This document shows, in pieces, positions 1 through 64,000 of a stretch of 64,000 nt of DNA. A program made the position numbers and the translations under genes. Below the pieces are notes generated by a model, which did no database searches, was not told where the DNA came from, and saw only the letters and a list, made by a program, of their open reading frames with translations. The DNA comes from Vitrella brassicaformis CCMP3155 (Eukaryota > Protista > Chromerida), in NCBI GenBank assembly GCA_001179505.1, contig CDMY01000367.1, positions 1 through 64,000 on the forward strand. Direction: 5' to 3'. Within the stretch, counting starts at the first letter, position 1; every line of letters starts with the position of its first letter.

Positions 1-871
1 GCACCCACCCAGACCAGCCCTTCGACCCGTCCATCCACCGCCTTCAGATGCACACGGCCATTCACGAGGGGAAGAGGCGGGCGTACGCACAGGCCAAGGA
101 GCGCTTCGACGACGGTATCGCCCGCCTTCCCCCAGGACGCCAACGAGCTGCTCGGCGCGCGCAGGAGGCCAAGATGCACGCGTGGCTCACGGCCATGCCG
201 TCGTGCAGCGATCAGACCGACCTCAGCGGCGATGCTTTTCGGGACGGCCTGGCGGTTCGCTACGGGTACCGCCCACCCAACCTCCCCTCCAGCTGCCCAG
301 GGTGTGGTTCCGCCTTCACCCTCACCCTGCCCTGGACTGCGCGAAGGGCGGGCTGATGATACAGCGGCACAACGAGCTGCGGGACGTGATCGGCGACGTC
401 GGCAGGATGGCCTTTGGGGCAGGGAGCGTCCACAAGGAGGTGGTGTTGAAGGAGGGGGATGGGCAGGGGAGGGAGGGGGTCAGGACGGACCTGGTGATTC
501 GAGGTGTGTGGGACCGCCAGAGGGATGCATCGTTCGACGTGTGCGTTACTAACGCTGATGCTCCCTCTTACGGCAACCGCCCCACGCGATCCATCCTGGC
601 GACGCACGAGCGCAGAAAGAAGAACAAGCATGTGCGCGTCTGCGAGGACCTGTCCATGACCTTCACCCCTCTGGTCGTCACCGTCGATGGGGTGTGGGGG
701 AGGGAGGCGGAGCACTTCTTCACCCGCTTGACTGAGCAGCTGTTGACGAGGCAGGGGTGGTCAGATAGGGGGCGAGGGCGGGTGCATGGGTGGCTGCGTG
801 CTCGTTTGTCTGTTGCATTGGTGCGGGCTGCTAGCCTGGACGGGGCTGGGGTGTTCTCATCGGATGAGTGA
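1..871 (+). pseudogene. Frameshifted C-terminus of the retrotransposon ORF (zinc knuckle plus RLE)
   Basis: Restoring one A between 327 and 328 (ACC C[A]T GCC = T-H-A) joins the two frames and restores the His of the CCHC knuckle. The upstream frame is open from the window edge. Confidence 0.75.
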
Positions 872-1273
872 GCGTGCCCTTTGTGCATAGACATATCTGG
901 ATAGATTCATGGAGGCGATTTGGACAAGCGAGTGCATGGATGCCATCTGTCAATTATCTCTTCCCTCGCTGCTGTACGAACAGCATGTCTTAGATCAGTG
1001 GGCGCTCGACGTCGAGCTCTCTGACTAGCCTGTGGGTGTCGTGCCTATGTCTGGCTGTCATTCTCGTATATCGCAACCGGTGTCGACAGCGATCTTTCTG
1101 ACCATCATAGGGTGGCACGTGCGTGTCGAGTGGGTGGGTGGGTGGGATGGGGAGACAGGCCGTGTGCATGCTTCTGTGCATGTGCATGCTGCTAGTTTAG
1201 TGCGTGACCTGGACAGGATCCCCTCGGGGTTACAGACACGAGTCTCGTTAAACACAATAACCAACCAACCAAC
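1..1273 (+). mobile_element. 3' portion of a CRE-like non-LTR retrotransposon (restriction-like endonuclease clade); continues upstream of the window; 3' end position tentative
   Basis: ORFs 48..356 and 182..871 join into WLTAMP...LSGDAFRDGLAVRYG...CPGCGSAFTLT(H)ALDCAKGG..RHNELRD (CCHC knuckle), then RTDLVIRGVW...FDVCVT and FTPLVVTVDGVWG (PD-(D/E)xK-type RLE). The 3' end is placed at an (AACC)n tract, 1259-1273. Confidence 0.8.
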
Positions 1274-1286
1274 TGCACAACGCGCG

Positions 1287-2117
1287 GCAGCACCATGGTC
1301 TTTTCTTTGCGCCTCCTGCTTGGTTTCTCTGTGTTGTGTGTGCAGCTACTTGGACTCAGACTTGAAGCAGCAGAATCAGCTGACGGTGTTATACTATGTG
1401 TGGCCGCCGCTCATGCAGGTGCAGCTCCAGACCGACTGCCGTGTCCGGGCCAAGCCATATGACCAAGACAATGACGCCGACTCAGTGTCCTTCCTGATTG
1501 AGAAGGACAAGGACGGCCGACTGATAGCCGAATACCCGAGGAAGCTGTGGGTGCTGGTCGGCGATGACTCGGACGTGAAGCCGGAGGAGGCCCTCAGGTT
1601 GCGCCTCGAGAAGCAGGTTGGTGGCGCCACGCCAGAGGGGTGACAGACGACGCGTTCTTCCTCTATGTGTGTGTGTGTGTTTATGTGTGTGAGCAGGCCT
1701 TGAGACACGGCTGCGCAGTGGACAACTTCGATCGCTGGCACTTCTACAAGTACGACAACAAGACGTACGACAAGGCCGGCGAACTGGTGCACGTCAAGAC
1801 ACTCGAACTGAAGGATGAGTCGCAGGCGATAGTGGACTCCATTATGGAGCTGCTTCATCGAGATGACACACGACTGCCGCTCCAGCGGTGGGACGACGCC
1901 TTGTATCACAACTTCGGTGTGTACCCAGGCACACTCACACACGCGCACATACACACACGAGTGCATCACACACACATTGGGTTCTTCTGGTCTGCTGCTG
2001 TCAATCCATTCCTGCCCAGATGAGGACGATGAAGAGGCATGAATGTCATATTGTGTATACCGAGAGGAAGGCGTCGACTTTTTCGTTGGGCGAAGGGCTT
2101 CTACCATGTGAGGCGGC
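1287..2117 (+). repeat. Direct duplication with 30970..31806 (introns retained)
   Basis: Homology starts at GCAGCACCATGGTCTTTTC and ends at ACCATGTGAGGCGGC in both copies. Confidence 0.9.
1346..2042 (+). CDS. Hypothetical protein, copy 1 (exons 2-4 only; exon 1 not seen); paralog of 30773..31730
   Basis: Exon YLDSDLKQQNQ...LRLRLEKQ, intron, ALRHGCAVDNF...LYHNF, intron, DEDDEEA*. Exons and introns are near-identical to 30970..31806. No domain recognised. Confidence 0.55.
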
Positions 2118-2536: not shown

Positions 2537-4700
2537 CCGTGCTGCTGTGACTCCTGCTTGGACTGACTGCATCCATGTGTGTCCATCAAATGTAACGAAA
2601 ACATCTCTGTCTGTCGTCTTGATTACCTATCGCGCACACGAGACTGCCCGTCCGTCACGTCTCACTGAGATGCATCAATCAGAGTCTGTCGCACACGGCC
2701 CTTTCTGTACAGACAACCCTACACACGAGTACGGCCACAGACGCTCCATCGGGAGTGTATATCAAAGAATTAGCAGCGCCCCATCTCACCGCACTCCAGC
2801 AAAGCTAAGCAGCATGGCCTTCACCCCCGCCGACAGCCCTAAAAACATTCATATCGCTACACAGAGGTGTCTGTCTGTCTGTCTGTCTCACTCCTGACTA
2901 ATGGCCGATACGATCCCATGAGGCGTGTGTGGACACGCTCACCACAGAAATAAAGATAAATAGACAGTGCGATGTGCGTATGGACACCGATCTGTCGCTG
3001 TACAGTACATAAAGTTGCTGGCTGTGTGTCATTCGCCCTGCCGGCTGATGGCCCGGCGGATGAACGACTTGACGAAGGCCATCTCAGATATGCCCATAAA
3101 GATGGCCTCCCTTGCCGCATCAATCAGTGCCGCCTCCACTTTCCCCTCATCAGACCCATCGCTGTCCTGGGGCGGCTCCACCAGCAGTGACATGCTCACG
3201 CCGGATATCCCAAACTGCACACGACACACACAGACACGGACGAAACTCATGTGCCGTGTGGCAGATGTTGCGTGTTTAGTCACCTCTTTGATTTTGTCGA
3301 TGACGTGTTGTAGTTTGTTGCCGTGCCGCTCCTTCTTGTCGGCCGCCATCATGCCCATCTCATGCTCGATGGCCGACACCAGACGACCTGAGTCCCACGA
3401 CTGACTCGCAGCCACGCCTCCCTCACGACCCCTCCCACCATCCCCACGGGGCCACCGGACGGCCCCCCGCCGCTTGAGTGACCGCAGGAAGCGCCGCAGC
3501 TGCGATATGATGACGAGTGCAATGCCCTTTGGCAGGCCGAGGTCGCGGCCGATGTCCTCACACGCCGCCACACTGTCGATGTCGTCCAACATGTCCAACA
3601 AACTCACTGCCGACCCGATGTCAAGCGACTGCACACACCGACATGACAACACACACTCTCATCCCGACTTCACACATGTGTGTTGCTCGTTGCTGACCAT
3701 GATTCTGTCGGCTACGTGTCGCATGTCGGGTGATGCGTCGGCCTTGAGCAGCTCCACCAGCTGAGCCTTCGTCAACTCATCGAACGGAATCACCTCCCCC
3801 TCGCCATTGCCGTCGCCACGGGCACCACCCCGCCCCTCGCCATCCACCGTGCGATTGGCCGTGGTCCGATCTCCGGCATCAGGTGCGTGTGGGTCATTGA
3901 CTGGTGGACGGGGCGGTGGCATCGTGACATTGATGTGGGCTGGCTCGTCGCCAGCAGGTAGCTGCTCGTCGTCTGCCGCCTTGAGTCGCTTGGGCGTGGG
4001 TGGTGTGGTGTGCTGCTGGCCGAGCTGATGAATGAATCGGTTGGCGGCCTCCCTGATGTCCTCGCCGTCACGCTGCCCCACCATGGCCGGCAGCTCATGC
4101 CGCACAAACGACTCGACGGATGCAAAGCTCAGAGAGGGGACGGCAGCCAACATCGCCCCAATATTGTCACCCACTTGACCATACAGACGGCAGAGGGCCA
4201 TCCGCTGGGCGTGTGTCATGGGCTGCTGATCCTGAGTGCCGTCGGAGTCTATCTCCTGCTGGCGGCATGCCCATGCCGCATCGATGGCCGCCCCCATGGC
4301 GTCCCTGGTGGCCGCTGAGAGGGGCACCGACTGCACTGGCGTCCCGGGCAGGACCACCTCGACGGCCAGCTGGGTCAGCGCAGACCCACTCCTGAACTGC
4401 AGACAGAGGGGGGTATCGGGGTGGGCTCTGCCGAGTGCCTCCAGCTGCTGGTAGAAGTGGCGAATGAGGTCCCCCTGCTGCACCGGCGTCACACGAGGGC
4501 CACGATTGGGCGTACGATGGATCGGCGTAGCCGGGGGGTCATTCCGTAGCCAAATGGGAGCCTCGATGTCAGGCGAAGGATTGCGGTCAAGGCGATTGTC
4601 CCTTCGGGGCCGCGGCTGCTTGGCATGCCGGGCATTGGGAGTGGCAGGCCGCCTGCCACGCACACCTCCGTCATGCAGCTGTACGGCCGTGCGCTGCGTC
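2537..4700 (+). repeat. Direct duplication with about 57590..59860 (3' end and 3' flank of the AP2 paralogs)
   Basis: Shared coding, intronic and downstream non-coding sequence, for example GAATTAGCAGCGCCCCATCTCACCGCAC at about 2767 and 57827. Confidence 0.9.
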
Positions 4701-7700
4701 GGCAGCGTGGCTTGAGGGTCCTGCTGCAGCCGACTGGAGGTCTCGATGTCAGGCATGAGATTGCGGTCGAGTCGGCTGGGATGCCGCGGTGGGCTGGTGT
4801 CATGGCGGTCAGCATTGGGTCTGTTCTTGACCACTGCCCACCCGCTGCGCTCCATCTCACGACGGTGCTGCTCGGCCAACGCCTGATAGAGCCAGAAGCA
4901 AAGAGCAGCGGATGAAGGGACTGTTCCTCCTTCTTGCCTTCTGTACCTTTGCTTTGTCGAACCCGCGATTTGTGACGGAGAAGGACTTCCTCTGCTGCTG
5001 CTTGGAGTCGCCGCCCGCCTCATACCAAGATGCAATCCAGCATTTATTAAGCCGATTCCAGTAGACGCCCCTCACATCAGACTGATGCTCGGCAGGCTTG
5101 CGGCCGACGATCTTGCCCTTGGCATTGGCCGCGTTGCTGCCCCTATGCTTCAATGGCCTCTCGATGGCCGATGGGCTGCTGGTGGCGGATGGGTCTCTGC
5201 GGCGATGCTTCTGGGGTGGGCTGCGGTCGTCCGACTCGTCACGCACCGAGCCCTCAGGCCCCTCCCGGCCGCCCCCCTGCTGTCGATCGAGCCATGAGAG
5301 GTCGATGGCCGTGGCCTGGTCACCCAGACGTGACTGGTGCACTGCGTTACGGTACTCGGCGGCTTGGCGCAGAGCCTCAAGGATGCTGTCAAGGGAGGTG
5401 ATGTCACTGATGGCGAAGGATTGACGGTCGAGATGTGTGCAATGGCCGCCGGAGAAGTAGGCGATGTAGTAGTACCTGTCCTTGCCCTTCTTGTGCAGGC
5501 TAATCCCGATCCTATGAAGGAAAGGAGAAATGCGCGTCGCTCCTCGCCCCATCTGGTGGTGTGCTTAGCTGACCCTCCATTCCCTTGCGGGCAGAAGTCA
5601 CTCGACTGCTCCTGGATCAGTCGCTCGAGCATGGCCCTGGCAAGCTCCTCACCTCCCAGCCCAGTCAGATCCCGCCTGTCGCGCGGCCGCTTGGGGTCAA
5701 CGCCGAGCCGCTTGCGGCGGGGGCGAGGGGGACGACGCGGGTCGGGACCGAGATCACCTCCGTCAGCACCAGACGACAGTAACGATGAAGAGTGCCGCCA
5801 TTGTGACGCATCAGATGGCGTGGCCACGTTGATGCTGCGGCGACCAGGACGCTGATCGGGTGAAGGACCCTGCCGATCTGGCGTATCATCCCCGTCGTCA
5901 TCCCTCATAGCCTCGCCCTCTGATGTGTGGTGCCTCAGCTCCATGGCACGCTTGTGGGATATGGCAGCCTGTTTCGCCTCCTCGTAGCCCAGCTGCTTGA
6001 CGGAGAAGAACTTGGTCTTCTCTTTGCCGTTCGCCTTCCAGCGGGCTTCCCATGAGTTACTGGTCTTGTTGTAGGTGACGCATTTGACACCGCTCTGGTG
6101 CTCAGATCTCTGCTTGATTGCCGCCCGACCGCTGCGCTCCATCTCGAGACGATGCTGCTCGGCCAACGCCTGACGCACACGTGAGAAAAAAAAGAGGATG
6201 AGATGGAGGCAGGGTGCTGCGATGCGAAGTCGGTACCTTTGCTTTGTCAAAGCCATGCTCCTTGACATAGAAGGTCTTGCGCTCCTCGTTGCCGCTGCTC
6301 TTCTCGTACCACTTCGCTATCCACGCCTGATGCTGTTCAGACCAGTAAACGCCACTCACGGCTGACTGATGCTGAGCCCTCGGGACAACGGTCCTTTGGT
6401 TGCCCTTGGCAGCCTTACGCCTCGGCTGTCCGTCGGACGAGGAGACGTCGCCCCGCCGATCCATGTCGTCATCACCAATGCCGTTCACATCCGACGCGCC
6501 ATTGTCATAATGCATCGACCGCCCGGACGCCGCACCAGCAGTCGAGTCTGGTTGCAGGTTGATCCGCCGCATGTCGATCATGATTGCCCCGGAGTCCGCC
6601 ATGGCGTTGCAATGCTGCGCTGCTTGGGTGAAGGCACGCAGAATGAGCCGGGATGAGGTGATGTCAGACACACGAAAGACACGCTGCCCGGGCCCTTCTC
6701 CGCCCTCTGGTCGATAGGCCACGAAACTCGCCTCCTCAGCATGCCACTCGAGACCAACACTGGATAGAACAAAAAATGAAAATGTGACTGATTCATTCCA
6801 ATGTCCATGCTTTCGGCCCACCTGCCGGTATTGTCCTTGGTGTTCCCGACCTGCTGTCGTGCGTCGCTCACCAGCCGCTCCGCCAGGGCATGGCCAGCCC
6901 CTTCACTCAGCCTGGGCCACACAAACCGGTCCCTCCCGCCGCCCGACTGGTCGCGACCTGGTCGATCGATGGGCATCTCGCCCGCATAACCGTCCGAGCC
7001 GACCACCCTATGTGACGGCCTGCCCCTGCGGCGCTGAGCCTGAATGGGGGGCGGGATGCGGTCATGGCCGTCGAGTGGGTGGATGTCACGGTCGTCAAGC
7101 AGTAGGGGTGGCGGCATGGACATGCGCCTCGCTCCGCGGCCGTGGCGCTCGAGAGGTCGGTTATCATCCCCTGCTGCCTCCCTCGTAGCTTCCTCGAGCC
7201 ATGACAGGTCGATGAGAACCGCCTGGTCGCCCAGACGTGACTCGTGGAGTGTATTGCGATACTCGACGGCTCGTCGGAAGGCCGTGAAGATGGCAGCACG
7301 GGAAGTGACGTTCTGACCCGCACTGAACTGGCGGGGGTCGACACTGGTTGCAGCCTGGCCGTCCCAGAAGTAGCTCTCGAAGACGTACGTCGCGCGCCAC
7401 GTGATGCCGATACTGACACACACACAAGACACAAAGGGAGAAACACCCTATCGCATCTGTCCGTTCCTCGTGGGAGTCGTTCTCGCTTACCCTCCGTTGC
7501 CGAGGCAGAGTGAGTATAGATTTGGCTGCTCCTCATGCAAGCGCCGTAACAGGCCACGTGCCAACGCATCACCCGTCATGCCGCCACCTTCCAGCCCTCC
7601 CATGTCCACCTCGGCGCCTCGACGGCCCTCTCGTGATGACAAGCGGGGGGGCGTGGGACCACTGCCAGCGTCGCGACCACCCTGACCGTCATCCCTCATG

Positions 7701-10697
7701 GCCTCGCCCTCTGATGTGTGGTGCCTCAGCTCCATGGCACGTCTGTGGGATATGGCGGCCTGTTTGGCCTCCTCGTAGCCCAGCTCTTTGACGGAGAAGG
7801 ACTTGAACTTTCGCTTGCCGCCCTCACTCCAGCTGGCTTCCCATGCGTTGGCTCCCTTGTTGTAGTGGACGCCCCTCACGCCGCTCTGGTGCTCCGATCG
7901 CTTTTGCATCGACGCCTGGCCAGTGCGCTCCATCTCCTGACGATGCCGCTCGGCCAACGCCTGACGCAGATGACACACAGGAGAAGAGCTTGACAAGCGC
8001 CGCTGGCGATCTTGTTGTCAGTCAATACCTTTGCTTTGTGGACGCCGTGCTCTTTGGCCGAGAAGTGCTTGAACTTGCGACCGCTCTTCTCGTACCACGA
8101 CACCTGCCAGACCCCATCGTAAGGACGCCAGTGGACGCCGCGCACATTCGACTGATACATGCCCTCGCTGGTGTTGGGCTGCTCATCCGCTGGGGGGCTC
8201 CTGCCGAGTGGACGTGTGAGGCGATGCTCCAGGGACGGGCTGCGGTCGACGGCCTCCTCGATGGTGGGGCGTGCCGGCTGCGTCACTTCCCCCGCTCTCG
8301 CAGTGGATCGTGGCTTGTGACCGTCACGAGGCTTCCTGCGTGACGCCTTCTTGGCTGACAGACCTGAGAAAAACAATACAGAGAGCCACAGTCAGTGGAT
8401 GGGCGCCGGTCGATTATTCGAGTGCGGCTCTTGTCGCATCCAACGTGCGTACATTTGTCGTCGTGTGGTCCGTCGTGAGATGCATCAGCCGCCCCACCAG
8501 CGACAGGGGGCGTGTACGAGTGGTAGGCTGCATCGGCGGGCGGCGCATCGTTGGCGCGGCCAGGGAAGCTGCTCTCCCCTGCACGCACAACAGCACGCAC
8601 ACAACGATCTGCATCATGCCCTCAAGTGTCTTCCTCCCCCGCCGGTCTTACTTGCAGGTTTCCACTGTATGAGGGTCCGCTCGACGCCATCGATGACATC
8701 CGACACGCTCTCGAACCGATCGTCAGTGTCTGCTGTGCCGTTGCGGACGGCCACCAGCAGGTCGCTCAGCATACTCGTGTCCCATCCCCTCACCACATCG
8801 TCACGAGCGACAACCGCTCGCACCCACACCGGCGGCCGGTCGGTCCCTCCCCCCTCCCCCCACCATGCCGTCACCACATACGGCAGCCCGTCGCCCTCGC
8901 CGGCCACACTGAACTGCACACCCTCATACTCAGCCGAGTACTTGCGGTGGCCGGGGATGCCCTTGTTGAGCAACACATCCGCCAAGGGGATCGGCCGGCG
9001 GCTTGACGTCCGCTCCCTGCTGTGGGAGGGTGCAAGAGGCCCCTCGCGCTCACGTGACCCGCCGACATCTTTGCTCTTCGGATCGCGTGGCTCGTGATGG
9101 TGATGGGCCGACGACACGTGCTGTCCTGCTGTGCTGGTGTTGCCGTGTGCTGCTGGTGGTGGAGCTGGTGAGTCTGCGGGGGGTGGGTAGGGCTGGTCGT
9201 CTGTCGTCTGTGCACAGGCTGGCTTGCGCTTGTCGTCTTGGGCAGCCGCTGCTGCACTACCCTGACCCACACACGGCTGACTTGCCGATGGATCAACATG
9301 CGATTGGGAGCCGGCATCCAACTGCTGTCCGAGGCGCCCCGAGGCCGAGTGGTACGGCTGATTCGGTAGAGACGACTGGTGGTGTTGGGTGAGGTGCAGG
9401 CTGTGTGGGGCGGGGGCCCGGTGCGTCAGAGCGTCAGTCGCCTGCAGCGGTCCCACAACTGCCAGAGGTCCCGATGACGCGCCCGCAGAGTGACGCTTCC
9501 CGTGCTCCAGAAACCTCGGCGGGGGAGGGACGGCGAGGAACTGCTCAGAGAACGAACCTGCCACCACAACACAGCCAATCGAGGCGGTAGGATTTATCAG
9601 GCGATGTGGCGTGGTGTGCTTGCCTTCTTCTCACCTGGTTCTGTGGGGCCAGGTGGCATTGGCCGGGACTGCAGGAACCGTCTCGCCCTGCCCTCATGAT
9701 GGCCCACGACCACTTCAAACGGCTCATCCTCCCTGAGGTCCCCTCCCTGCCTCGCGCGCTTCAGCAAACGCGTCACAGCCCCCAGCCGCCACCCCTTGTC
9801 AGCATCTTGACGAACGAAGGGGAGCCTCACATACAGCTCCTGCCCCTCACCGTCATGCAACGGCCCCGCCGTCACACCGCACAGGCCGCAAGAGGCATCG
9901 ACACCATACACGTTGAAGTCAACCCCTTGGTAGGCCGCATGGTACATGCCCTGGTTGCTGGGGTCGCCACGCTTCTGCAGCATCTCCCGCAGTGAGTTGA
10001 GAAGGTCCCCAGGCTGCGAGGGAGGGGCGGGTGGAGTGTGTGCAGTGGGATGGCCAGAGTGGGAGGCACCAGGTGGAGAGAGTGCTGGCGCATGCTTGTT
10101 CTCCCGCACGCGAGATGCTGTGTTGTTGGCTCCAGAGCTTCCCTCTCGCTCGTCTTCCCCAGCTGCAGCCCTGCCGGTATGGGCTTGACACGACTGGCTT
10201 GCAGATGCCGCATGCGACTGAGGTCCAGCAACCAGCCGCTGTGCAGCGCGCTCTGAGTATGGATGAGGCGCCTCAGGGGGAACAGACGGATAGCCATACT
10301 GGTGCCTCTCCACTGGATCCGTCTGATGGGGCGCGGCAGTGGGATCAACAGACGGATGGTTGTGTTGATACATGCCCAGTGCTGGTGCGCCATCCGAAGA
10401 CGGACCAGGAGCCGACGAGGCCGCCTGCATTGCTGGCGTGGTGGTGGCCCCAGGATTGGCTTGGAAAGTCGCCGCGGCACCACTAGCAGATGTGTAAGAG
10501 CCCGACTGAAGCGGCTGGATAGAAACAGATGAGTGGTTGTCCTGATACATCTCCAAGGCTGATGCGGCCACGCCGGCAGCATGTGACGACGACGCATGAG
10601 TCGCCGAGGCCGCCTGCACGATGGCTGCCAGAGCCCGATAGCCGTCCTCAGCTGACGATGGTGAGCTGTCAGCAGGATGGGTGGGCTGACTCGCCAT
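2805..10697 (-). CDS. Multi-AP2 (ApiAP2-type) protein A: two N-terminal repeat domains, 5 AP2 domains, 3-4 AP2-like X modules, C-terminal SAM-like domain; about 13 exons
   Basis: AP2 motifs such as HQSGVRGVHYNKGANAWEASWSEGGKRKFKSFSVKELGYEEAKQAAISHRR at about 8160-7935, 7890-7735, 6372-6140, 6102-5940 and 5088-4850. Phase-compatible GT-AG junctions link ORFs 9597..10697, 8614..9567, 8283..8600, 7876..8376 and the downstream ORFs. Last exon (K)AVGGGEGHAA* is inferred from synonymous differences with paralog B. Confidence 0.85.
3481..3790 (-). other. SAM-like domain within AP2 protein A (split by one intron)
   Basis: Spliced IPFDELTKAQLVELLKA..MRHVADRIM|SLDIGSAVSLLDML...EDIGRDLGLPKGIALVIISQLRRF follows the SAM pattern (..V..WL....A..F....IDG..LL.L....L..LG+..G...I). 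Recognised by eye only. Confidence 0.6.
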
Positions 10698-11857: not shown

Positions 11858-14800
11858 CTAAAAATAACGCCCCTGCACCGGGCCCTGGTTCATGATAGGC
11901 CAGAAGCCCTGCTGGTGCTGGGGGATCACTGCACGCGCCCCTCTGCCCTGGTAGTCGACCCCCTGGACCACTTGGGGCGGCTGGGGCCCGTAGCCATAGC
12001 CGAATGCCGGGCCGCAGGGGGCTGGAGCTGGCGAGGGAACGGGTGCGTTGCGCATGTCGCGGAGGTGGGCGAGGATGCGCTCGAAGGATGGCCGCTGCGA
12101 TGGTTCGTGCGCCCAACACAGCTCCATCAACCGCCTGACAGTACAGTGACACACACGCACACGCAGCGACGTATGTGCATACATGTGTCGTGTCCTCCTT
12201 CACGCCATGCGATGCGATGCGATGCGTGTCTGTGTGTCTATCTGATCTGTATCACTCACTCACCGCATCTCGTGTGGGCAGTCCCTGCCGATGAGTCTGA
12301 GGTCCGGCCGTCTGCCCTTTGCCACGGCCAGCCCCACCCCCACCGGCGGTAGCCCCAACTCCTCGTAAGGAATCCGACGCGCGAACAGCTCATAGAGCAC
12401 GATGCCGTACGAGAAGACATCCACCGCCGCGCCGTAGGGCCGCCCCTCCAGCACCTCTGGCGCCATCCAGTGGTAGGTACCCGCGGCGCCCGTCATGACG
12501 GCGTTCTTGCTCGTGGCGGCGGGGAAGGATGGCGCGCCGAAGAGGCGGGAGAGGCCGAAGTCGCTGACCTTGACGGTCGGCAGGTCGCTGGGGGAGACGA
12601 GCTGCTCGGACAGCAGGAGGTTGAGGGACTTGAGGTCCCTGTGGACGATCGGCGGATTGCACGTGTGCAGGAAGGTCATCCCCTGATTGATTGAGGCACA
12701 CACACGGGGGGCAACAGACACAGTGAGAATGAATCGGACGTTCAACGCAACGCTCGTGTCCTCTCCTCTCCCCCTCAGCTCGCTCACCTTTGCAACGTCG
12801 ATGGCGATCTTGAGCTTCTGCTGCCACGAGAGAGTGGTGTTGGGGTGGTTGTGCAGCAGGTCGAACAGTGTCCCGCCGGCACAGTACTCGGTGATGACAC
12901 ACAGGGGCGGCCGCTTGGTGACCATGCCCATGAACAGCACCAGGTTGGGATGCCGCAATCGCCGCATGATCTGCAGCTCCCGCAGGAACTCCTGCAGCGC
13001 CCTCTGCTGGCCGCCGCCCCCCTCTGCCATCCGCCGCAGGTCGTCCAGTGACAGGAAAGTGCTGAGCCGCTTGATGGCCACCTCTGTGCCGCGCCACATG
13101 CCTCGGTAGACCTCGCTCGTCGCTCCGCTGCCCACGCGCTCGCCGAAGGTGAGCTCGTGCGGCGGCACCTCCCACTCGGCCGTGGGGGCCCCGTCGCTAG
13201 ACTCACTGGGGCTGTCCCTATCCCTCGCCGCCTTGCCGGCGGGATGCCGCTCCCTGTCCCTTTCCCTGTCTCGATCTCTCCGTTTGTGTGCTCTCTTCCT
13301 GGCGACCGTCTGGAGCGTGGCGTCTAGCTCCTGCAGGGCTCTGGACCGGTCGATGCTGGCCTGGGACTGGTCGTTGGAGGAGGAAGAGGGCTGGGTGTCC
13401 TGGAAACGCACCCACTCTGTCGGCGTGGGTGGTGTGGCAGCAGCGGGAGGGGTGTGAGGGGGGGAGGGGCTTGCAGGCGGCTGTGGCTGTGGCTGTCTGT
13501 CCGTGTCCCCATGGCGGCTCCTCTCCATTGCCTTGGACGACTGATTGGACGGAGGGCCGGACACCGCTTCATGCGACGGGTGTGACGGCCGGGCGGGCGG
13601 TGCTGGTGGTCTGAAGTTGGGTTTGATGAACTCCATGCCTTCATGCTCACGCTTGGCCCGACCCTGCCACCCCATCCGCGGCTCGCGGCCGCCCAAATAC
13701 GCCGACCGGGCCTCGTTCTCGGCCACCACCGCCCTGTGCAGCTCATTCGTGTTGAGATCGAACGGATTGCGGCCGCCAGTGACGGCTGATGGGGGAGGGG
13801 TGAGGCTCCTCGCTGGCTCCTGTGGTGGGGCCTTGGATGCATCGCTGATGGGTTGGTTGTCGGCGGCCTTCGGTGACGACTCCGTCTGGTTGTGCTGCAT
13901 GTGTGTGATGGCGCCAGGAGCGCTGAGTGGACCGGTCTTGTCAGTCGACCGACTTGGTGGTTTGCGGGGCGCGGGGAGGGGCGAGAAGAGGTCCACACAC
14001 GCCACGGGGATGGTGCGCTTGTCGCTCCGCCTCCTCGCCACCCGCATATGCAGCGGTCTGCCGGGCAGGATCTTGACGCCCTCCCCAGTCCCATCTCTGC
14101 CAACGGGTGTCGGCGGGCTGGATGGGGGCGCTGCGGGTGGAGATGATGGCTCAGGTGGTGTGACGGGAGGCGGAGGGGGCGAGGGGGGGAATCGCGCTGA
14201 TGTGGAGGCGAGCAGCAGCTCGTCATCGTCGTCGATCAGCTTGGCGACGGCATCCTTCAGCTCGGCCGACTGCTGTTTGCCGAGGCTTCTTTTGTCGTCT
14301 GATACTGTTGCCGCGCTGATGTCCGACCCCTGCATGCTGCCCTGCCGGTGCATGAAGGTCTCGAACGACTCGTCCAGCAGCTTGAGGGCACAAGACGTCT
14401 CGAAGGCATCTTGGAAGGGCTTCGAGGGCTCGGGCGAGCCGGGAGATGCCGGTTGTGGCGGCGGCGATGCTGACGATAGCTCGTCTGCCTCCTGCACGTC
14501 CTTGAACTCATCGTCGTCCACTTCAGCGGTGACGGCGGCAGGAGGAGCAGGCTGGCTCTCTTGCAGTTCCTCCTCAGGCCCTTCGTCGTCGCTGTCACGC
14601 TCTGACTCGAAGGGGCAGAAGTCCAGCGACGAACGCCCGCTCTCGCTGAGCTGCTCGCGCCTCTCGTCGCCCTTCTGCTCACCATCCTCTCCTTCCCCCT
14701 CTCCCTCTTCCTGGCTGCTGTCCTCACTGGGAGTCCAGTCAGCCACCCAATCCGGCGCATTGATGTTGTAATGCGGGAGGTCCGCCACCGCCCCAAAGTC

Positions 14801-17800
14801 ACTCGGCCACCCCATGTCTGTGGCGCCTTCAGCCAGGAAGGGCACATGAGTCGGCCGGGGCTGGCCACCATCTTGCTGCTCCTTGAGAGGGGTGAGGAAG
14901 GGGGACGGGGTCCTCTCCTGGTGTGAACCGAATTGCGTCCACCCTGCAGGTGACCCTGACCCGCACGACGACACGGGCGACCCCCCATCGTCGTCTCGCT
15001 TTCTCTGCCTCCTCAGCAGCAGAGGCTGACACGGGTGGCTCTGACACAGAAACGGGTCAGGCTCGGGGCTGCCCGGCAGCTGCACCGCCGCCACGCTCTC
15101 AAGCACTCGTGTGAGCTTTGGCGGGAGGTCGATGGATGGCTCGAATGCCGGATGCTGTTCCTGTGGCTGTGGCTGTTGCTGAGGTGGGGGTGTGGGGGTG
15201 GTCGGCGTGGTTGGGTTGGACTCTGCGGACGAGTAGTTGCCGGTGCGTGTGGAGTCGGTGCCACTGCTGTTAAACGGAGGGAGGCCGTCGAAGAGGTCGA
15301 CAAGCAGAGGAGGGGGCGGGTCGAGACGATACAGGCCCGGGTACAGCGGCCGCAGAGACGACAGCAAACCTGACAGGCACACACACATACATACAAGAAT
15401 CCATCCATGGCAGGTCAGGTACCGTCCCACCACCCAACCCAACGTACCTGTGATGTTGTGGAGTACAGTGACGAACTCCACATACTTGCCTCTCAGCCCC
15501 GTCAGCCCCTCCGCAAGCTCACGCCGCCTCACCTCTCTCTGTCCCTTTTCCCCTTCCTCTTCCCCACCACCACAGCCACAACCATCCTTGCCGCGGCTCT
15601 GCGCATGGTACTTGAGCACTAGCGCGCCGGCAAGGTGTGTGACGGTGCCCAGAAGCCCCTGCAGCTCGTCAAGCAGCGGCTGCAGCGCGCTGATGAGCAG
15701 GGCGGTGGAGGGGGAGGCGGAGGGCGATACCGGCTCCATCGGCAGGCACTGCAGCAGGAAGGCCGTGAGCGCGTACACGGGTTTGGCGAAGTGCAGGAGG
15801 CTGTCGACCATTGATGGCGTGACAGGCGATGAGTCGGGTTCCAGCTCGGCCGCACGATCGAGGTCCAGATCGTAACGTGACAGGTAGTGCTCCAACGACC
15901 AGTTTCCTACAGACACACACAGCACATTCACGTTAGTTAACATGGACGGACCATGACCATGACAGGCCCTCTCCTCTCTGATTGATGTGTCCGGCTGACC
16001 TTGGAAGAAGTGCGGCCCCTTCTGGTGTGTGGTCATCTTCAGCAGCAGCAACTCACAGTAGTCGGTCATGGCCGCCAGCGACACGGCCGACGTGTCGTCA
16101 TCATCGTCAGTGTCATAGCCGTCACCCTCGAGGACGTCCTTCTTGCGCTTCTCGTCGCGCAAGCCCTTCTGCGGGAGCCAAGCTGAGTGCAGCTTCTGGA
16201 GCAGCTCTCTGATGGACGGCTGGGCGGTGATGGTGGTGGGCCCCTGCTGCATGGCACGGTGCAGCACTATCAGCGCCTTGAAGGCCACCACACGGTCGGT
16301 GAGCACGGGGCGCTCCTACATGGAATCAGACACGACACAGGCGCACAATTTAGCCGTGCCGTCAGTGTGTTGTGTCGGTGTCTTGTGCTGTTTTGTTCTC
16401 TCTCAGGTACCTCGATGCATTTGGCCAGGTGGGCGGTGCCGTTTGGCATCGTCCACAAGTCCAGCACAATACGCTGGAGGGCCACTAAATCCGCAGCAGA
16501 CACGCAACTGACAACAAGGGACACAACAGGGTACACACAATGCGAGCCAAAGCGTCTCGTCGATGTGTGGCTCGTGCGCTGTGTCGCGTACCTCTCTGTG
16601 GCTTTGGCGACCGATCGCAGCTGCATGGAGGCCACCATGGGCTTGTCCCCCTCGACCTGCGCCTCGCTCTCCTCACTACTCGTGTCGCTGCTGCACTCCG
16701 GTCGCCACGCGAAGCTGCAGCCCCAACCGTCCTCTGTCACCTGCTTCTCCTCTTGAACACCCCTCACGCCACCGGCAACAGCAGACGAATCCACTTGCCT
16801 CTCAACATCCACAGCGACATCGGCCACCTCTTTGTGCTGGGGAGACGACTCGTGCAGGGGAGACTCATTACCGGTGTCGTCAGTGGTGACCGGCGCTGGG
16901 TCGGTCTCCACCCCTGCCGGCCGCCGGAGCCTCCCACCCCAGCCACAAGTGCCACTGATGGCCTCGTCCATGACCGAGCCATTGAACTTGAGCTCATCCC
17001 GCACATACTTATGCGGAGACCGGATGGTCAGCGCCGAAGAGTGACACCGCCGCAGACGGTGAGCTGCCGGCAGGGGTGGCAGACTGAGGTCCTGCTCTGT
17101 GCGCCACCTCGGCGCCCGCCTCACTGGGCTGGAGTCGTCCTCCCACGCCAAAGGGTTGGCCGTGGCCGTCTGGGAGCTGACAGAGATGTTGCGGGTGATC
17201 CAGTCGAACGACATGGCTGTGTCAGAATCGTCGGACGGCATGCGGATGGGCACCGACTTGGATGAGGACGGCAGGGGGATGGTGGTGCTGCTGCTGCGGC
17301 GCTCCCGCAGGTGGGCCAGGTGCGCTCTGATCTCTGGTAGTGCCGGTCTGCGTGTGGGCAGTGGGTGTGTGAGGGATCTGAGGAGGTCGTGCAGGGCCTG
17401 GGAGTAGAGGGACGACGGGGGGATGCGGAGGCGGGCGAAGGAGGTGTCCTTGAGCGACGAGTCGTGCGATGAGGGGGAGCTCTCCGGGATGATACAACCA
17501 TGCCTCTGCCTGCACTCACACACACACACACACGGAGAAGATTGCAGACAGCGCTTCCTTCCGCTTGTCATTGTCCTGGTGCGAAGTGACCTCTCCTTCG
17601 CTGTTGGCTGTGCGGCTGAGGGCTTCTTGTTTGTCCTCTTGTCGTGTGCGGGCTCGTGTGCGAGTGCCTTCTTGAAGCAGACGTCATACATGAGACAGGT
17701 CAGCTGTGAGAGGTCACGAGAGACGCCATCCTCGCGAGAAACTTCTGGCAATCCACACCTGTGTGTGTCATACACACACAGCAAACAAACGCCCACAACC

Positions 17801-31730: not shown

Positions 31731-31910
31731 ATGTCATATTGTGTATACCGAGAGGAAGGCGTCGACTTTTTCGTTGTGGGAAGGGCTTCTACCATGTGAG
31801 GCGGCTGTCAATAAGTATCGATATGGGATCGCCAGCAGTCAGGCAGACGCGCAGGCCTGTGTACATACGTTTTGAATCTCTTATGTGATCACCGTGAAGG
31901 CGGACGCAGA

Positions 31911-55110: not shown

Positions 55111-55142
<32 letters not shown>

Positions 55143-55928: not shown

Positions 55929-55978
55929 CGCGCGCTCAAAAACTCACCAGATCTGCGCTGATAGATACATGTGCTTCT

Positions 55979-55999
55979 GGGTTTGGGTTTCAGGGTTTT
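55979..55999 (-). promoter_or_regulatory. Telomere-like cluster GGGTTT-GGGTTTCA-GGGTTTT in a divergent intergenic region
   Basis: Lies in the roughly 110-bp gap between the insulysin ATG (55928) and the ATG at 56038. Confidence 0.4.
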
Positions 56000-56037
56000 G
56001 GCGCGCAGGTCGTGGTCCGGCGGAGAAGCGTCTCATA

Positions 56038-57865: not shown

Positions 57866-60800
57866 CTAAGCAGCGTGGCCTTCGCCCCCGCCGACAGCTC
57901 TCAAAACATTTATATCGACACATCGTCAAGCTGTCTATCTGTCTGTCTGTCTCTCTCTCTGTCTCAAAAAGGCCAAGGTCCTCTCTCTGTCTGTCTGACT
58001 GCCTGATGGCTGAGTAACCGCCACGGGCGATAGACAGCATGAGGCGAAAGCGCGTGTGTGGACACGCTCACCACAGAAACAAAGATAGATAGACAGGGTG
58101 CGATGTGCATATGGACACCGAGCTACTGCTGCACAGTACAGTACATGAAGTTGCTGGCTGTGTGTCATTCGTCCTGCCGGCTAATGCCCGGCGGATGAAC
58201 GACTTCACCAAGGCCATATCAGATATGCCCATGAAGATGGCCTCCCTCGCCGCATCGATCAGTGCCGCCTCCAGTCTCCCCTTATCAGACCCATCGCTGT
58301 CTTGGGGCGGCTCCACCAGCAGTGACATGCTCATGCCTGATATCCCATACTGCACACACACGAATGGAATCCATGTGCCGCATTCTGTGTGCTGTGTGTT
58401 GTGTGTTGACTGACCTCTTTGATTTTGTCGATGACGTGCTGCAGTTTGCCGCCGTGCCGCTGCCTCTTGTCCTCGGCCATCATGCCCATCTCACGCTCAA
58501 TGGCCGACACCAGACGACCTGCGTCCCACGACTGGCCGGCAGCCAGGCCTTCTCCGTCCCCCCTCACACCATCCCCAGGTGGCCACTGGACGGCCCCCCG
58601 CCGCTTGAGTGACTGCAGGAAGCGCCGCAGCTGCGCTATGATGACGAGTGCGATGCCCTTGTGGAGGCCGAGGTCGCGGCCGATGTCCTCACACGCCGCC
58701 ACACTGTCGATGTCATCCAAGATGTCCAACAAACTCACCGCCAAACCGATCTCCGTCTGACCCGACATGACAACACACCGACATGACAACACACACATTC
58801 ATCCCGACTTCACTCATGTGTGTTGCTCGTTGCTGACCATGATTCTGTCGGCTACGCGTTGCATGTCGGGTGACGGGTTGGCCTTGAGCAGCTCCACCAG
58901 CTGACCATTCGTCAGCTCATCGAACGGAATCATCTCGCCCTCCCTCTCGCCATCCCCGTCGCCACGTCCACCGTCCCGCCCTTCGTGCGTCGGCCCATCC
59001 ACCATGCGAAGGGCAGCGGCCGGATCTCGTGTGTGCGGGCCATTGGCTGGCGAGGGGGACTGCGTCTGCGGGACCACATCGGCCGCGTCTCGACTCATGG
59101 GCTGCGGACGGGGCGGTGGCCGCATCGTCAGGGCGATGTTGGGTGCCTCATCGCCAGCTGGAAGCTGCTCGTCGTCCGCCGCCTTGAGCTGCTTGGGCCT
59201 GGGTGGTGTGGCGTGCGCCTGACGGGGGTGCTGGCCGAGCTGTTTGATGAATCGGTTGGCGGCCTCCTTGACGCCCTCGCCGTCACGCTGCCCCACCATG
59301 GCCGGCAGCTTATGACGCACAAACGAGTCGACGGACGCAAAGCTCAGAGCTGGGACGGCCGCCAGCATCGCCCCAATGTTGTGACCCACTTGGCCGTACA
59401 CGCGACAGAGGACCATCCGCTGGGCGTGTGTCATGGGCTGCTGGTCCTCAGTGCCGTCGGTGTCCATCTCCCGCTGGCGGCATGCCCAAGCGGCATCGAT
59501 GGCCGCCCCCATGGCCTCCCTGGTGGCCGCTGAGAGGGGCACCGACTGCACTGGGGTGCCGGGCAGGACCACCTCGACGGCCAGCTGTGTCAGCGCAGAC
59601 CCACTCCTGAACCGCAGACAGAGGGGCATGTCGGGATGGGCTCGGCCGAGTGCCTCCAGCTGCTGGTAGAAGTGACGAATCAGGTCCCCCTGCTGGACCG
59701 GCGTCACACGAGGGCCGCAACCGGCCGTGCGATTCGTCGGCGGTTCAGGCGGAGCGTCTTGCTGTAGCCGACTGGGAGTCTTGCTCTTGAGGATAGGATT
59801 GCGGTCGAGTCTTCCGTCTCTGCGGCGCCGTGGCTTGGTGTCACGGCGAGCAGTAGGGTCCAGAGGCACACCGGCTCTCACACCAGCCTGACGGAGCTGA
59901 GGCGCCTGTCGCTGTTTGCCAGGCAGAGGATCGTCGCCATCGTCGGCACTTCTTGCATCAGCCGGGTCGCCATCCAGCACCGCCGCACGCTCGGACGTGT
60001 GGGACTGCCTCTTCAAGATGGCCCGTAGGTGGCTGATGGCGGCGCCTTTGGCCTCTTCGTAGCCCAGCTGCTTGACGGAGAAGCTTTTGGTCTTCTCCTG
60101 ACCGCTCGCCTTCCAGCGGGCTTCCCATGTGTTGTGTGTCTTGTCGAACCTCACGCGCTTGACGCCGCTCTGGTGCTCAGATCTCCGCTTCATTGCCGCC
60201 CGACCGGTGCGGTCCATCTCGAGACGATGCTCCTCGGCCAACGCCTGACGCACACGTGAGAAGAATAGAGGGTGAGATGGAGGCAGGGTGCTGCGATGCG
60301 ATGTCGGTACCTTTGCTTTGTCGAATCCGTGGTGCTTGACATAGAAGGTCTTGCGCTTCTCCTTGCCGCTGCTCTTCTCGTACCACTGCGCTATCCACGC
60401 CTGGTCCCTCGCAGACCACGAGACGCCCGACACGTGCGACTGGTGTTCGGCAGCCTTTCGTGTGACGGCCTCGCCCTTATCCCTGGCTGTCGTGTTGGTC
60501 TGTGGCCTCGGCTGCCTCTCGATGGATGGTTTGCTGCTGCTGGCGAGAGCCGTATCTCTGCGGCGTTGCTTTCGAGAGGGGCTGTGGTCGGATGACTCGT
60601 CATGCAGCGAAGCCTCTGGCCCCACCGCACCCCCCCCCCCTGCTGCTGCCGGTCGAGCCATGAGAGGTCGATGACGCTCGCATGATCGCCGAGTTGGTCA
60701 CGGTGGATGGTGTTGCGGTACGCCACACACAGGCGAAGAGCCTCGAGGATGCTGTCACGGGAGTTGGGGTCGTCGATGACGAACTTGCGGAAGCCAAGGT

Positions 60801-63800
60801 ACTTGCCCTGTTTGTAGAAGTAGGCACCGAAACGTCTCGGTGAAGCCATACAGACGCCCACCCTGACGGGACGCCAAAGATAGGATGCGAAGATATGTCG
60901 CTCCCCCTTGTCGTGTGTGTTGCTCACCCTCCATCGGCGGGCGGACAGGCGTCGTTGAACCGTCGTACCAGTCGGTCCACCAGGGCCGTGGCAAGGAAAG
61001 CCCCAGTCAGCCCATCCAGGTTGGGGTCGTCGCGGACTCTCTTGCGGCCGACGGCGTTCCGCTTGCCGGCGTGACGACATGCCGGGCCATCCCCCTCCTG
61101 AGCTCTCCCGCGACGCATGAGAGGGTCCGCCCTCTGTGCCCTTTTGCTGTGCCTGCATTCCGGGCAGAACCACTGGCCCTCCGGAACAGCCGTGAGGTTG
61201 ATGCAGTAGGTGTGGTAGGCGGCAGAGCAACGCCGGTTGTCACACAGGAGGAGAAACTTCTCGTTGTCGCCCTTGCCGCACTTCCAGCACCGCACTGACT
61301 CATCCGAGCCACTCCTCGCCTCATCCATCTCGCCGCTCTGCGCCTTTGCCGCCTCACCGCCGCCCACGCCACTCAGGTCATTCCCCTCGAGCGGCTGTTT
61401 GTGGCAGTGACTGCTCCGTTTGGGGAGGGGGTGGGGCGGTGGGCGCGGGCGGCGGCTGTCATGGGACTCGCTCTCACGTCCGTCACCACAGAACGACGAT
61501 GAAGAGCCCCGCCGCTCTGAGTCTGAGGATGAGGCCATGGCGGCGTCGCGGCTGGGCGGACTGGGTAGTGGCGTGCGGCTGCGATGTCCGACGGCAGGGT
61601 GGACGTCGCCATGAGAGGCTGCCGTTACCCCTGCATTGGCCCGTCGGTATGCTATGGCCGCACTCATCGCATCCTCGTAGCCGAGCTGCTTGACGGAGAA
61701 GGACTTGAAGTTCTTCTTGCCGCCGGTCCGCCAGTCGTCGGTCCACGCATTGCTTCTTTTGTGGTAGTAGACGCCCTTGACGCCGCTCTGGTGCTCAGAT
61801 CGTTTCCTGACGGTCGCTCGTCCGATGCTCTCCATGTGCCTCCTGTCGATACTGGGGCTCGTGACGTCTGCCACATCACCACTGTGGCGCTCCACCGACG
61901 GGCCGTCGGTTGCCCTATTGCCGACGAGGCGGGTGAACAGGGGAAGGCTCTCGTCGTCGAATGACTCATCGCGATGGCCGTCGTATGGAGAATGACCCCT
62001 GGCAACTCCCTTGCTTGGACGCTTCGAGACCGATATGCCGACGCTGCTGTCGCGCATGTGGGTATCGGAGCCCTGTGCTGTGTGGCGCGACGACTGAGGG
62101 CGACAGGCAGAGTGGACGGAGTGGACGCTTCCCTCAGATGTGTAGTGCCGCTGCAACATGGCACATCTGTGGTTGATAGCGGCATTCTTGGCGCCCTCAT
62201 AGCCCAACTCAGCCACTGAGAAGGACTTGCGCTGCTTCCTGCCGCCCACATGCCAACAGGCGATCCACAGGTTGGTCGCCTTGGCGTAGTGGACGCCTCG
62301 CACGCCGCTCTGATGCTTCGATCTCTTTTGCAACGACGCCTGGCCGGTGCGCTCCATCTCGAGACGATGCCGCTCGGCCAACGCCTGAAAGAAACAAGCA
62401 GAGCAAGAGAGGTTCTGGCTTGGGTGTGCTTCCTTCTTGCTTGTTGCACCTTTGCTTTGTCGTAGCCATGCTCCTTGACGTAGAACCGCTTGCGCTCCCT
62501 CTTGCCGCTGCTCTTCTCGGACCACTGCGCTTGCCACGCCTGATGCTGTTCAGACCATGAGACGCCCCTCACGGCTGACTGATGCTCGGCAGGCTTGCGG
62601 GCGGCGGTCTTGCTCTTGCTGGCCCTTGGCCTCGATCGGCCGTCGGGTGAGGTAACGTCGCCATATCCATCCATCTCACTATGACTCGACTCATCACCAT
62701 CGTCGCCACTGGCACGAGCACTCGCCCGGCTGCCGACTGCGTGGTTGTGCAGCTCCTGTGGCTGTAGGCTGACCCGCTGGACGTAGATGGTCGCTGCAGT
62801 GTCGCCGTGGTGGGCATGGCGGATGATGTTGAGGTGGTGGGCCGCTTGCGCAAACGACTGAAAGATGCGCCGTGAAGACGTCACGTCAGACACCCGAAAG
62901 ACACGCTCGTCGTGCATGGCCTCTCCGTCTGGTCGATAGGCCGCAAAGCTGGCCTCCTCGGCGCGCCACTCGAGACCAAAGCTGCATGGCACACACATCA
63001 ACGAAAGGTCAATGGGTAGCCCATTCCACCAACCAGAGTGCATGCCTTGCGCCCACCTGGCGGTACCTTCCTGGTTTACGTCCACGAGCTGCCGCCTTGC
63101 CTGCTCCACCAGGCTGGCCGCCAGCGCATGGCCGCCCGCCTCACTCAGCTTCGCCGACAAACACCGCTCCTTCCCACCGCCCGACTCGTCGCGATGGCGC
63201 TTGGCCGCTGGTCGGTCGATGAGCATCTCGCTCTCAGAGCACGACGAGTCGGCTACTGGCCGCTCACTGACACGATGCGACGACCTGCCTCGGTGACGGC
63301 GCCGGGGCCGAATGTGGGGTGGCATGGGGACGTCGGTGCCCAGTGGACGGTCACTGGGACTCTGAGACACAGGCCGTAGCGGCATGGGTTTGCGCCTCGC
63401 TCTCCTGCTGCGGCGCATCTGAGGGCCAGCGGAGCCGTGGGAGCTGATGTCATCGAGCCAGCTGAGGTCCAGGGGGACGGCGGCCTCTCCCTCACTAGCC
63501 GTGCTCAGACGGTTGAGCTCCTCGACGGCTCGGCGAAAAGCGTCCATGACGGCCGAACGGGAGTCGAGGTCGACCACCGGCACATCGACAATGCGCTCAG
63601 TCGCACCCTCCCCGACAGAGGACGGCACACGGACACGGAAGCTGCCCTTCTGCCAACACAACCCGCATGACCTGCCCGAAAGATCCGACCCCACACACAC
63701 ACCACACACGTGACAAATCTGGCCCTTCCTGTCTTCCCTTGTCTTGTCTTACCCGTCGCTGCTGAGGACCTCAACGAGGGCAGCAGCCAGGTCGCCGCCC

Positions 63801-64000
63801 TCCATCCCACTTACACCTGGCCTGCTGCTGGGGGGGCCGTGGCGGGGCGCCGAGTGAATCGCATCATCATCTTTGGGGGGACTGCGGGAAAGGCTCTCAT
63901 CTCTCGTCGCCCCTGCCTCTGAAGTATGGCGCCGCTGCTCCATCTCCCGTCTGTGTGCGATGGCCGCCTGTTTGGCCTCCTCGTAGCCCAGCTGCTTGAC
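57866..64000 (-). CDS. Multi-AP2 protein B (5' end outside window): at least 6 AP2 domains, X modules, PHD finger, SAM-like domain; apparent frameshift at a G11 run
   Basis: AP2 domains at about 63940-64000 (partial), 62585-62355, 62315-62160, 61795-61640, 60445-60210 and 60178-60025. The C-terminal region is closely similar to protein A. Frame change at 60630-60640. Confidence 0.8.
61155..61289 (-). other. PHD finger (C4HC3) within AP2 protein B
   Basis: CWKCGKGDNEKFLLLCDNRRCSAAYHTYCINLTAVPEGQWFCPEC. Confidence 0.92.

What the first reader, a model, noticed from the sequence alone, without database searches (positions are those of the whole stretch)
2805..10697. Candidate system: shuffled AP2-array transcription factors with a conserved SAM effector end (KRAB-ZNF-like logic)
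Seen: two paralogs, A here and B at 57866..>64000, share a closely similar C-terminal block (Y module + SAM-like domain + tail). Their upstream arrays differ in number and order. A = Z-Z-AP2-AP2-X-X-AP2-AP2-X-AP2-Y-SAM. B = ...AP2-X-X-AP2-AP2-AP2-PHD-X-AP2-AP2-Y-SAM. The beta-sheet segments vary strongly (GVHWRPYDGVWQVSW, GVHYNKGANAWEASW, CVTYNKTSNSWEARW, GVYWNRLNKCWIASW, GVYYHKRSNAWTDDW, RVRFDKTHNTWEARW) while the helix is stereotyped (GYEEAKQAAI / GFDKAK|ALAE.HR.EMER). Established: AP2 domains read DNA through the beta-sheet; SAM domains can polymerise (e.g. Polyhomeotic); typical ApiAP2 proteins have 1-4 AP2 domains. Inference: a rapidly diversifying family with re-programmable DNA specificity and a fixed chromatin effector, possibly targeting repeats or transposons.
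Basis: partly seen in the sequence, partly recalled or inferred. Interest (0 to 1): 0.82.

Follow-up and report, generated by a model that had tools for sequence, protein, structure and literature searches.

The report
Fast-evolving multi-AP2 gene family, Vitrella
The alga Vitrella has a species-only family of giant DNA-binding proteins whose DNA-reading units are gained, lost and swapped between copies and change fastest at the DNA-touching residues, while both protein ends stay constant; this resembles how vertebrate zinc-finger repressors evolve, but nothing yet shows what these proteins bind.

Summary
Observation confirmed. The genome is Vitrella brassicaformis. Gene A (window 10697-3029, minus strand, 12 exons, 2296 aa) is intact and spliced in RNA; paralog B has the stated array but three frameshifts and a stop. 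About 11 copies carry the same tail. Y holds a Myb/SANT-like domain, the SAM call has moderate structural support (Z 5-6.6, low-confidence model, no Pfam hit), and X is a divergent AP2-like unit. AP2 DNA-contact positions evolve at dN/dS about 1-1.3 against 0.2-0.4 elsewhere. Tree-based tests suggest positive selection; tree-free tests do not exceed 1 significantly. Corrections: long arrays are mostly deletions and duplications of one template with some cassette exchange, not free shuffling; the N-terminal Z block is as constant as the tail; many relatives lack the SAM tail; most copies examined are broken or span scaffold gaps. Transposon targeting is untested, and Vitrella is transposon-poor. 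The ApiAP2 expansion in Vitrella is published (Woo 2015), and this scan noted the family before on other contigs; I found no paper on the architecture or the contact-site signal.

The parts
3029..10697 (-). Gene A, 12 exons, 2296 aa (P0011). Exons 10697-9635, 9557-8652, 8578-8453, 8363-8029, 7960-7491, 7412-6822, 6759-6237, 6169-5574, 5511-4947, 4882-3698, 3628-3284, 3214-3029
   Evidence: Exon chain equals P0011; introns 2-6 and 8 seen as RNA joints, introns 7 and 9 as matching loose ends
9663..10007 (-). Z1 module, fold unknown
   Evidence: no convincing Pfam hit
8656..8985 (-). Z2 module, N-terminal constant block of the family, fold unknown
   Evidence: 18 matches in the genome, about 16 separate Z2 places; dN/dS 0.31
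7925..8160 (-). AP2 type a no. 1, helix split by phase-0 intron 7961-8028
7727..7894 (-). AP2 type b no. 1, intron-free
   Evidence: Pfam PF00847 E 5e-16
7193..7585 (-). Xa: capping helix, phase-2 intron, divergent AP2-like core
   Evidence: hhalign X vs AP2 E 3.2e-4 over 54 columns
6567..6910 (-). Xb module
6134..6374 (-). AP2 type a no. 2; its intron matches B's position-4 intron (cassette exchange)
5936..6103 (-). AP2 type b no. 2
   Evidence: Pfam E 2.5e-14
5286..5671 (-). Xc module
   Evidence: RNA joint 5510/5573 in two studies
4847..5090 (-). AP2 type a no. 3
4238..4495 (-). Y1: helix-3 strands-helix, same topology as X; family not assigned
   Evidence: model of paralog P0006; weak dsRBD/HPF-like hits only; no profile match to X; dN/dS 0.16
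4016..4237 (-). Y2: degenerate Myb/SANT-like domain
   Evidence: paralog model: Reb1 Z 8.0, Bdp1 SANT 7.3, CoREST SANT2 6.1; Pfam Myb E 0.0013, under cut-off, in P0006
3461..3793 (-). SAM-like five-helix domain, split by intron 3629-3697
   Evidence: paralog model: all eight rows covering it are SAM-domain proteins, Z 5.2-6.6; Atlas feature leads; no Pfam SAM hit
3032..3400 (-). Helical C-terminal tail, unassigned
58068..64000 (-). Paralog B (P0002, runs on to contig position 65327): Z-a-b-Xd-Xb-a-b-b-PHD-Xc-a-b-Y-SAM; lesioned
61146..61301 (-). PHD finger of B, closest single-domain matches BAZ2B, ATXR5, BAZ2A, KDM5A
   Evidence: Pfam PF00628 over cut-off
60631..60641 (-). Poly-G run with frame break in B
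58173..59707 (-). Y-SAM-tail block of B

Best explanation
A Vitrella-only, birth-and-death family of giant ApiAP2 chromatin-binding transcription regulators. Each gene has a constant N-terminal Z block and, in one subfamily of about 11 copies, a constant C-terminal block (Y1, SANT-like, SAM-like, helical tail). Between them lies an array of canonical AP2 pairs, AP2-like X units and an optional PHD. Arrays derive from one template by unequal crossing-over and gene conversion between homologous AP2 cassettes; same-phase introns keep the frame. SHOWN: anatomy, splicing of A, array variation, cassette exchange, fast change at DNA-contact positions. INFERRED: each copy reads a different set of DNA motifs multivalently, and the SANT/SAM end (plus an unmethylated-H3K4-type PHD where present) oligomerises or recruits a shared, most likely repressive, chromatin partner. 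The targets are unknown.
For: Family size: 11 SAM-exon and 24 Y matches, all protein relatives from Vitrella where named. Arrays differ, yet 7 of 11 gap-free stretches follow one template better than shuffles. Same-position AP2 domains have pS 0.28-0.50 against 0.15 for Y and 0.14 for SAM; the closest AP2 relatives and intron types cross positions. Contact sites: dN/dS 0.79 (type b) and 1.13 (type a) against helix 0.18 and 0.10. In 22 close pairs, 51% of contact residues differ against 18-21% elsewhere (Fisher p below 1e-11), and 61 distinct four-residue codes occur among 64 domains. M8 vs M8a LRT 12.2 and 13.2, omega 2.0 and 1.7, above all 16 recombining null simulations (maximum 6.7). Folds. 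RNA joints.
Against: Tree-free dN/dS at contact sites is 0.9-1.3 and not significantly above 1. The SAM exon also gives a significant M8 test through toggling sites, a sign of recombination artefact. The SAM model has pLDDT 46-64, and a first model found no SAM. At least 6 of 9 fetched tail-bearing copies show lesions. No RNA contig spans A end to end. No binding, localisation or partner data exist.
Confidence: 0.62

Rival explanations
1. Genome-defence version (true KRAB-ZNF analogue): the arrays track transposons, viruses or repeats in an arms race, and the constant tail silences them.
For: Clustered, species-specific, high turnover, many pseudogenes and contact-site acceleration match the KZNF pattern described in PMC7655104. 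A young multicopy element family exists, with copies 94-98% identical.
Against: No target data. Vitrella has only about 1.5 Mb of transposons, Chromera about 30 Mb (PMC4501334), and no Chromera relative was found. Positive selection is not established tree-free.
Confidence: 0.18
2. Relaxed, largely neutral expansion: a recombination-prone gene family is decaying. Fold residues stay constrained, but the specificity of any one AP2 in a redundant array is free to drift.
For: Contact-site dN/dS is indistinguishable from 1 in pairs; many lesions; tails lost or swapped for SHP/UBX.
Against: Site-model LRTs exceed the recombining nulls; A is intact over 2296 codons and spliced; every other module is under purifying selection, dN/dS 0.11-0.42.
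Confidence: 0.2
3. RNA-binding or non-chromatin scaffold: the AP2 units are repurposed for RNA, as in the Toxoplasma mitoribosome, and SAM or Y1 bind RNA.
For: Best solved-structure matches are AP2IX-6 and AP2VIIb-2 chains of large multi-chain entries, which I take to be mitoribosomes (PMC11742926 abstract); Y1 weakly resembles dsRBDs.
Against: Fusion with PHD and SANT-like domains; variation sits at the positions known to contact DNA; the dsRBD hits are not significant.
Confidence: 0.06
4. The array variation is mostly an assembly artefact.
For: Arrays on C269 and C290 span 300-N gaps with identical modules on both sides or on two contigs.
Against: A, B, the C348 copy and several other stretches are gap-free and differ; A-specific joints are in RNA; almost all AP2 domains are unique sequences.
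Confidence: 0.05

Closest known systems
ApiAP2 transcription factors, Vitrella paralog expansion (Woo et al. 2015, PMC4501334)
   Same: PF00847 domains over cut-off; the paper reports one cluster of 50 homologous Vitrella apiAP2 genes made by duplication, probably this wider family (not checked gene by gene).
   Different: The passages read give no architecture. Here there are 5-7 canonical AP2 plus 3 AP2-like units per gene (four in the C. parvum multidomain example, PMC4117751), fused Z, SANT-like, SAM-like and PHD modules, and hypervariable contact residues, whereas these are conserved among PF14_0633 orthologs (PMC10728482).
KRAB-ZNF and ZAD-ZNF families
   Same: Clustered lineage-specific paralogs, variable DNA-reading array, constant terminal domain, rapid turnover, accelerated contact residues.
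   Different: No KRAB, ZAD or C2H2 domain; unrelated fold; readers are spaced by long linkers, not head to tail; tens of copies, not hundreds; no corepressor or transposon binding shown. Analogy only.
SAM-bearing chromatin proteins (Polyhomeotic, Scm, L3MBTL3, SAMD1, TEL)
   Same: SAM-like five-helix domain near the C-terminus of a chromatin-type protein; L3MBTL3 SAM Z 5.0, Scm Z 4.4.
   Different: No sequence-level SAM match; the best structural hits are signalling SAMs (SARM1, Hyphen); polymerisation untested.
PRDM9 (from memory, not tested)
   Same: DNA-contact residues diversified by conversion within a repeat array, attached to a fixed chromatin module.
   Different: Single-gene minisatellite with a SET domain; here a multigene family with no catalytic domain found.

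Membership tests
ApiAP2 | AP2 domain (PF00847) over the curated cut-off | tested here: met
ApiAP2 | Alignable to the DNA-bound PF14_0633 domain with its four contact positions | tested here: met
   3IGM E 2.9e-4 with the family profile; alignment; N72, R74, R88, S90 from PMC10728482
ApiAP2 | Sequence-specific DNA binding | not testable with these tools
   needs PBM or DAP-seq
KRAB-ZNF | KRAB domain and C2H2 finger array | tested here: not met
   no such Pfam hit at E up to 1
KRAB-ZNF-like logic | Clustered paralogs with variable reader arrays and a constant terminal domain | tested here: met
   the tail is constant only in a subfamily
KRAB-ZNF-like logic | Positive selection on DNA-contact residues | tested here: inconclusive
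   M8 significant and above 16 recombining nulls; pairwise dN/dS 0.9-1.3, not above 1
KRAB-ZNF-like logic | Binding to transposons and recruitment of a corepressor | not testable with these tools
   no binding or interaction data
SAM domain | Five-helix SAM fold | tested here: met
   five helices; rows covering residues 238-335 are SAM-domain proteins, Z 5.2-6.6, rmsd 2.7-3.7. Moderate: paralog model, low pLDDT, first model negative
SAM domain | Sequence match to Pfam SAM families | tested here: not met
SAM domain | Head-to-tail polymerisation | not testable with these tools
   needs biochemistry
Myb/SANT (Y2) | Three-helix Myb/SANT fold | tested here: met
   Z 8.0 Reb1, 7.3 Bdp1, 6.1 CoREST; Pfam E 0.0013, under cut-off
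AP2-like (X) | Homology to AP2 over strands and helix | tested here: inconclusive
   hhalign E 3.2e-4 but probability 39%; no Pfam or PDB hit; not folded
PHD finger | Cys4-His-Cys3 match over the Pfam cut-off | tested here: met
   B and four paralogs; absent from A

The most novel reading that the evidence does not exclude
A protist has independently evolved a KRAB-ZNF-like genome-defence system from AP2 domains: recombining arrays are re-targeted by positive selection to mobile elements, and a shared SANT-SAM tail polymerises and silences them.
Probability: 0.18. Interest if true: 0.85.

Novelty: new variant of a known kind. Interest (0 to 1): 0.58.

Why it matters
Arrays of DNA readers that are re-targeted quickly and tied to a constant effector are known mainly from animal zinc-finger proteins. 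The same evolutionary pattern in AP2 domains, in the closest free-living kin of apicomplexans, would be a case of convergence. It also shows, while it is happening, the duplication and turnover that Woo et al. proposed for the ApiAP2 repertoire. The 64 closely related AP2 domains with nearly all-different contact residues are a natural library for working out an AP2 recognition code, which is directly testable in vitro. Limits: no function is shown, many copies are broken, and the organism has few genetic tools.

Tried and rejected
Pfam and PDB sequence searches for SAM, Z, Y1, X and the tail gave nothing useful. The first structure model (SAM plus tail, pLDDT 47) gave no meaningful match. Foldseek and Atlas structure searches of the second model were uninformative; the Atlas feature search for Y was blank. 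An ACDC identity for Y2, my first guess, was dropped for Myb/SANT. Y1 as an X-type module was not supported by profile comparison. 'Free shuffling' was rejected for the long arrays; that template was drawn from the same data, so its p-values are optimistic. X modules as variable readers: no selection signal, pN 0.07-0.18. Two Z-type or two SAM-type ends: only one SAM-like domain per tail was found. The gene as cargo of a mobile element: flank homology ends at different distances, with no common terminus. Paper searches found no description of this architecture. My own spliced model was not sent to any search: searches used exon references or database protein ids, and the join was made only inside a script to compare with P0011.
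Full report
Source. The genome has 72,700,666 bases in 1064 contigs, the figures published for Vitrella brassicaformis (PMC4501334), and database relatives carry that name. That paper reports one cluster of 50 homologous apiAP2 genes in Vitrella, made by duplication. The expansion is therefore known; the passages I read do not describe its architecture.

Observation. Gene A runs from 10697 to 3029 on the minus strand. Twelve exons with GT..AG introns translate exactly to the annotated 2296-aa protein P0011. Contigs of two runs from different studies show joints at introns 2-6 and 8, and loose ends match introns 7 and 9. The joints in the middle of A are A-specific; those in the Z2 region could come from B, which is 91-97% identical there. 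Introns 1, 10 and 11 were not shown for A, but paralog transcripts contain the joined SAM and tail (P0007). No contig spans the whole gene. B reads Z-a-b-Xd-Xb-a-b-b-PHD-Xc-a-b-Y-SAM. It has lost Z1 by a deletion of about 1.2 kb and carries a frameshift plus stop in Z2, a frame break at a poly-G run and a 3' frameshift. I could not check these lesions against reads.

Modules. Canonical AP2 domains come in two types: a, with a phase-0 intron in the helix, and b, intron-free; they usually occur as an a-b pair. X is a capping helix, a phase-2 intron and a core that aligns to AP2 over 54 columns (E 3.2e-4, probability 39%). In a model of the divergent paralog P0006, the second half of Y matches Myb/SANT domains (Reb1 Z 8.0, Bdp1 7.3, CoREST SANT2 6.1). 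All eight rows that cover the last domain are SAM-domain proteins (SARM1 Z 6.6, Hyphen 5.9 and 5.6, BFAR 5.6, DGK-delta 5.5). Language-model neighbours include three SAM families, as leads only. This support is moderate: pLDDT is 46-64 there, Pfam has no SAM hit, and a first model failed. B's PHD is closest to BAZ2A/B, ATXR5 and KDM5 fingers; from my own knowledge most of these read unmethylated H3K4. Z, Y1 and the tail remain unassigned.

Family. The SAM exon has 11 matches on 6 contigs and Y has 24, clustered on C290 and C269. X has about 57 good matches on 13 contigs and Z has 18, many on contigs without Y or SAM. The tail is thus fixed only in a subfamily; one copy has an SHP/UBX tail instead. 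No relative outside Vitrella was named in four protein searches (one unnamed JGI fragment). At least 6 of 9 fetched tail-bearing copies have frame breaks, stops or deletions, and several span 300-N scaffold gaps with duplicated modules beside them, so their full arrays are unreliable.

How the arrays vary. Against the template Z-ab-Y-Xa-ab-Xd-Xb-ab-Xe-PHD-Xc-ab-Y-SAM, A keeps 11 of 12 modules in order and B 13 of 14; 7 of 11 gap-free stretches beat shuffled orders (the template comes from the same data). Variation is mostly presence, absence and duplication. Real exchange also occurs: AP2 domains at the same position are only slightly more alike than those at different positions (0.276 vs 0.315; 0.261 vs 0.284), their pS is 0.28-0.50 against 0.15 for Y, well-supported sister pairs cross positions, and A's third-position intron matches B's fourth-position intron in a 93% identical window. 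A and B are about 90% alike at both ends and 65-80% in between. Unequal crossing-over and conversion between homologous cassettes explain this (inference).

Selection. I fixed the contact set beforehand from PF14_0633 (N72, R74, R88, S90; PMC10728482) plus three positions recalled from AtERF1 (memory). On 64 domains, dN/dS at these sites is 0.79 (b) and 1.13 (a), against 0.24-0.31 for the rest of the sheet and 0.10-0.18 for the helix. In 22 close pairs, analysed without a tree, 51% of contact residues differ against 18-21% elsewhere; dN/dS is 0.9-1.3 and not significantly above 1; nearly every domain has its own contact code. Site models give omega 2.0 and 1.7 with M8-M8a LRT 12.2 and 13.2; most flagged sites lie in strands 1-3 and the first turn. 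Recombining null simulations were nominally significant in 5 of 16 runs but never passed 6.7. The SAM exon also tests positive through toggling sites, which warns against over-reading. These models are my own scripts, GC3 is about 0.8, and broken copies are included. Verdict: release from constraint at contact sites is certain; diversifying selection is likely but not proven.

Mechanism. Most likely each intact copy binds its own combination of DNA motifs through several AP2 pairs and brings a shared SANT/SAM end, probably repressive, to chromatin (0.62; binding and repression inferred). Transposon defence is one version of this (0.18). It fits the KZNF pattern (PMC7655104), but Vitrella holds only about 1.5 Mb of transposons and no target is known. 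Neutral drift in a redundant, decaying family is the main rival (0.2).

Standing. It is a member of ApiAP2, not of KRAB-ZNF; it evolves like the latter. The scan had noted this family on other contigs.

Noticed in passing
window 1-900 (+): Frameshifted 3' part of a multicopy element; 84 matches at E below 1e-20, several 94-98% identical. By eye it looks like the zinc knuckle plus restriction-like endonuclease of a non-LTR retrotransposon; no Pfam or PDB hit.
   Followed up: partly
window 1288-2117 and 30973-31805: 830-bp duplication, 96% identical.
   Followed up: no
window 12260-16306 (-): ANTH-domain plus protein kinase gene directly upstream of A. One 4.8-kb RNA-run contig reaches from A's second exon far upstream, which does not show a single transcript.
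   Followed up: no
G000:C290:110303-110407 (L011): First SAM exon followed by an SHP/UBX-type tail instead of the rest of the SAM (P0016).
   Followed up: partly
G000:C850:143900-152100 (P0006): Divergent paralog with ten X units and only two canonical AP2; keeps Z1-Z2 like A, so Z1-Z2 may be ancestral. DNA not fetched.
   Followed up: partly
G000:C290:25792 and 33455; C269:96108 and C290:132124: Identical modules beside 300-N gaps or a contig end: probable scaffolding redundancy.
   Followed up: partly
G000:C708, C781, C640: Closely spaced tandem AP2 arrays, about 200 bp apart, without X, Y or Z hits: a separate AP2 array family.
   Followed up: no
G000:C677:40410-40673 (probably P0008): The SANT-like Y2 module occurs alone in an unrelated 542-aa protein, a possible source or recipient of the module.
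   Followed up: no
window 52000-56000 (-): Multi-exon gene that reads like an insulinase-type (M16) peptidase, by eye from ORF translations.
   Followed up: no
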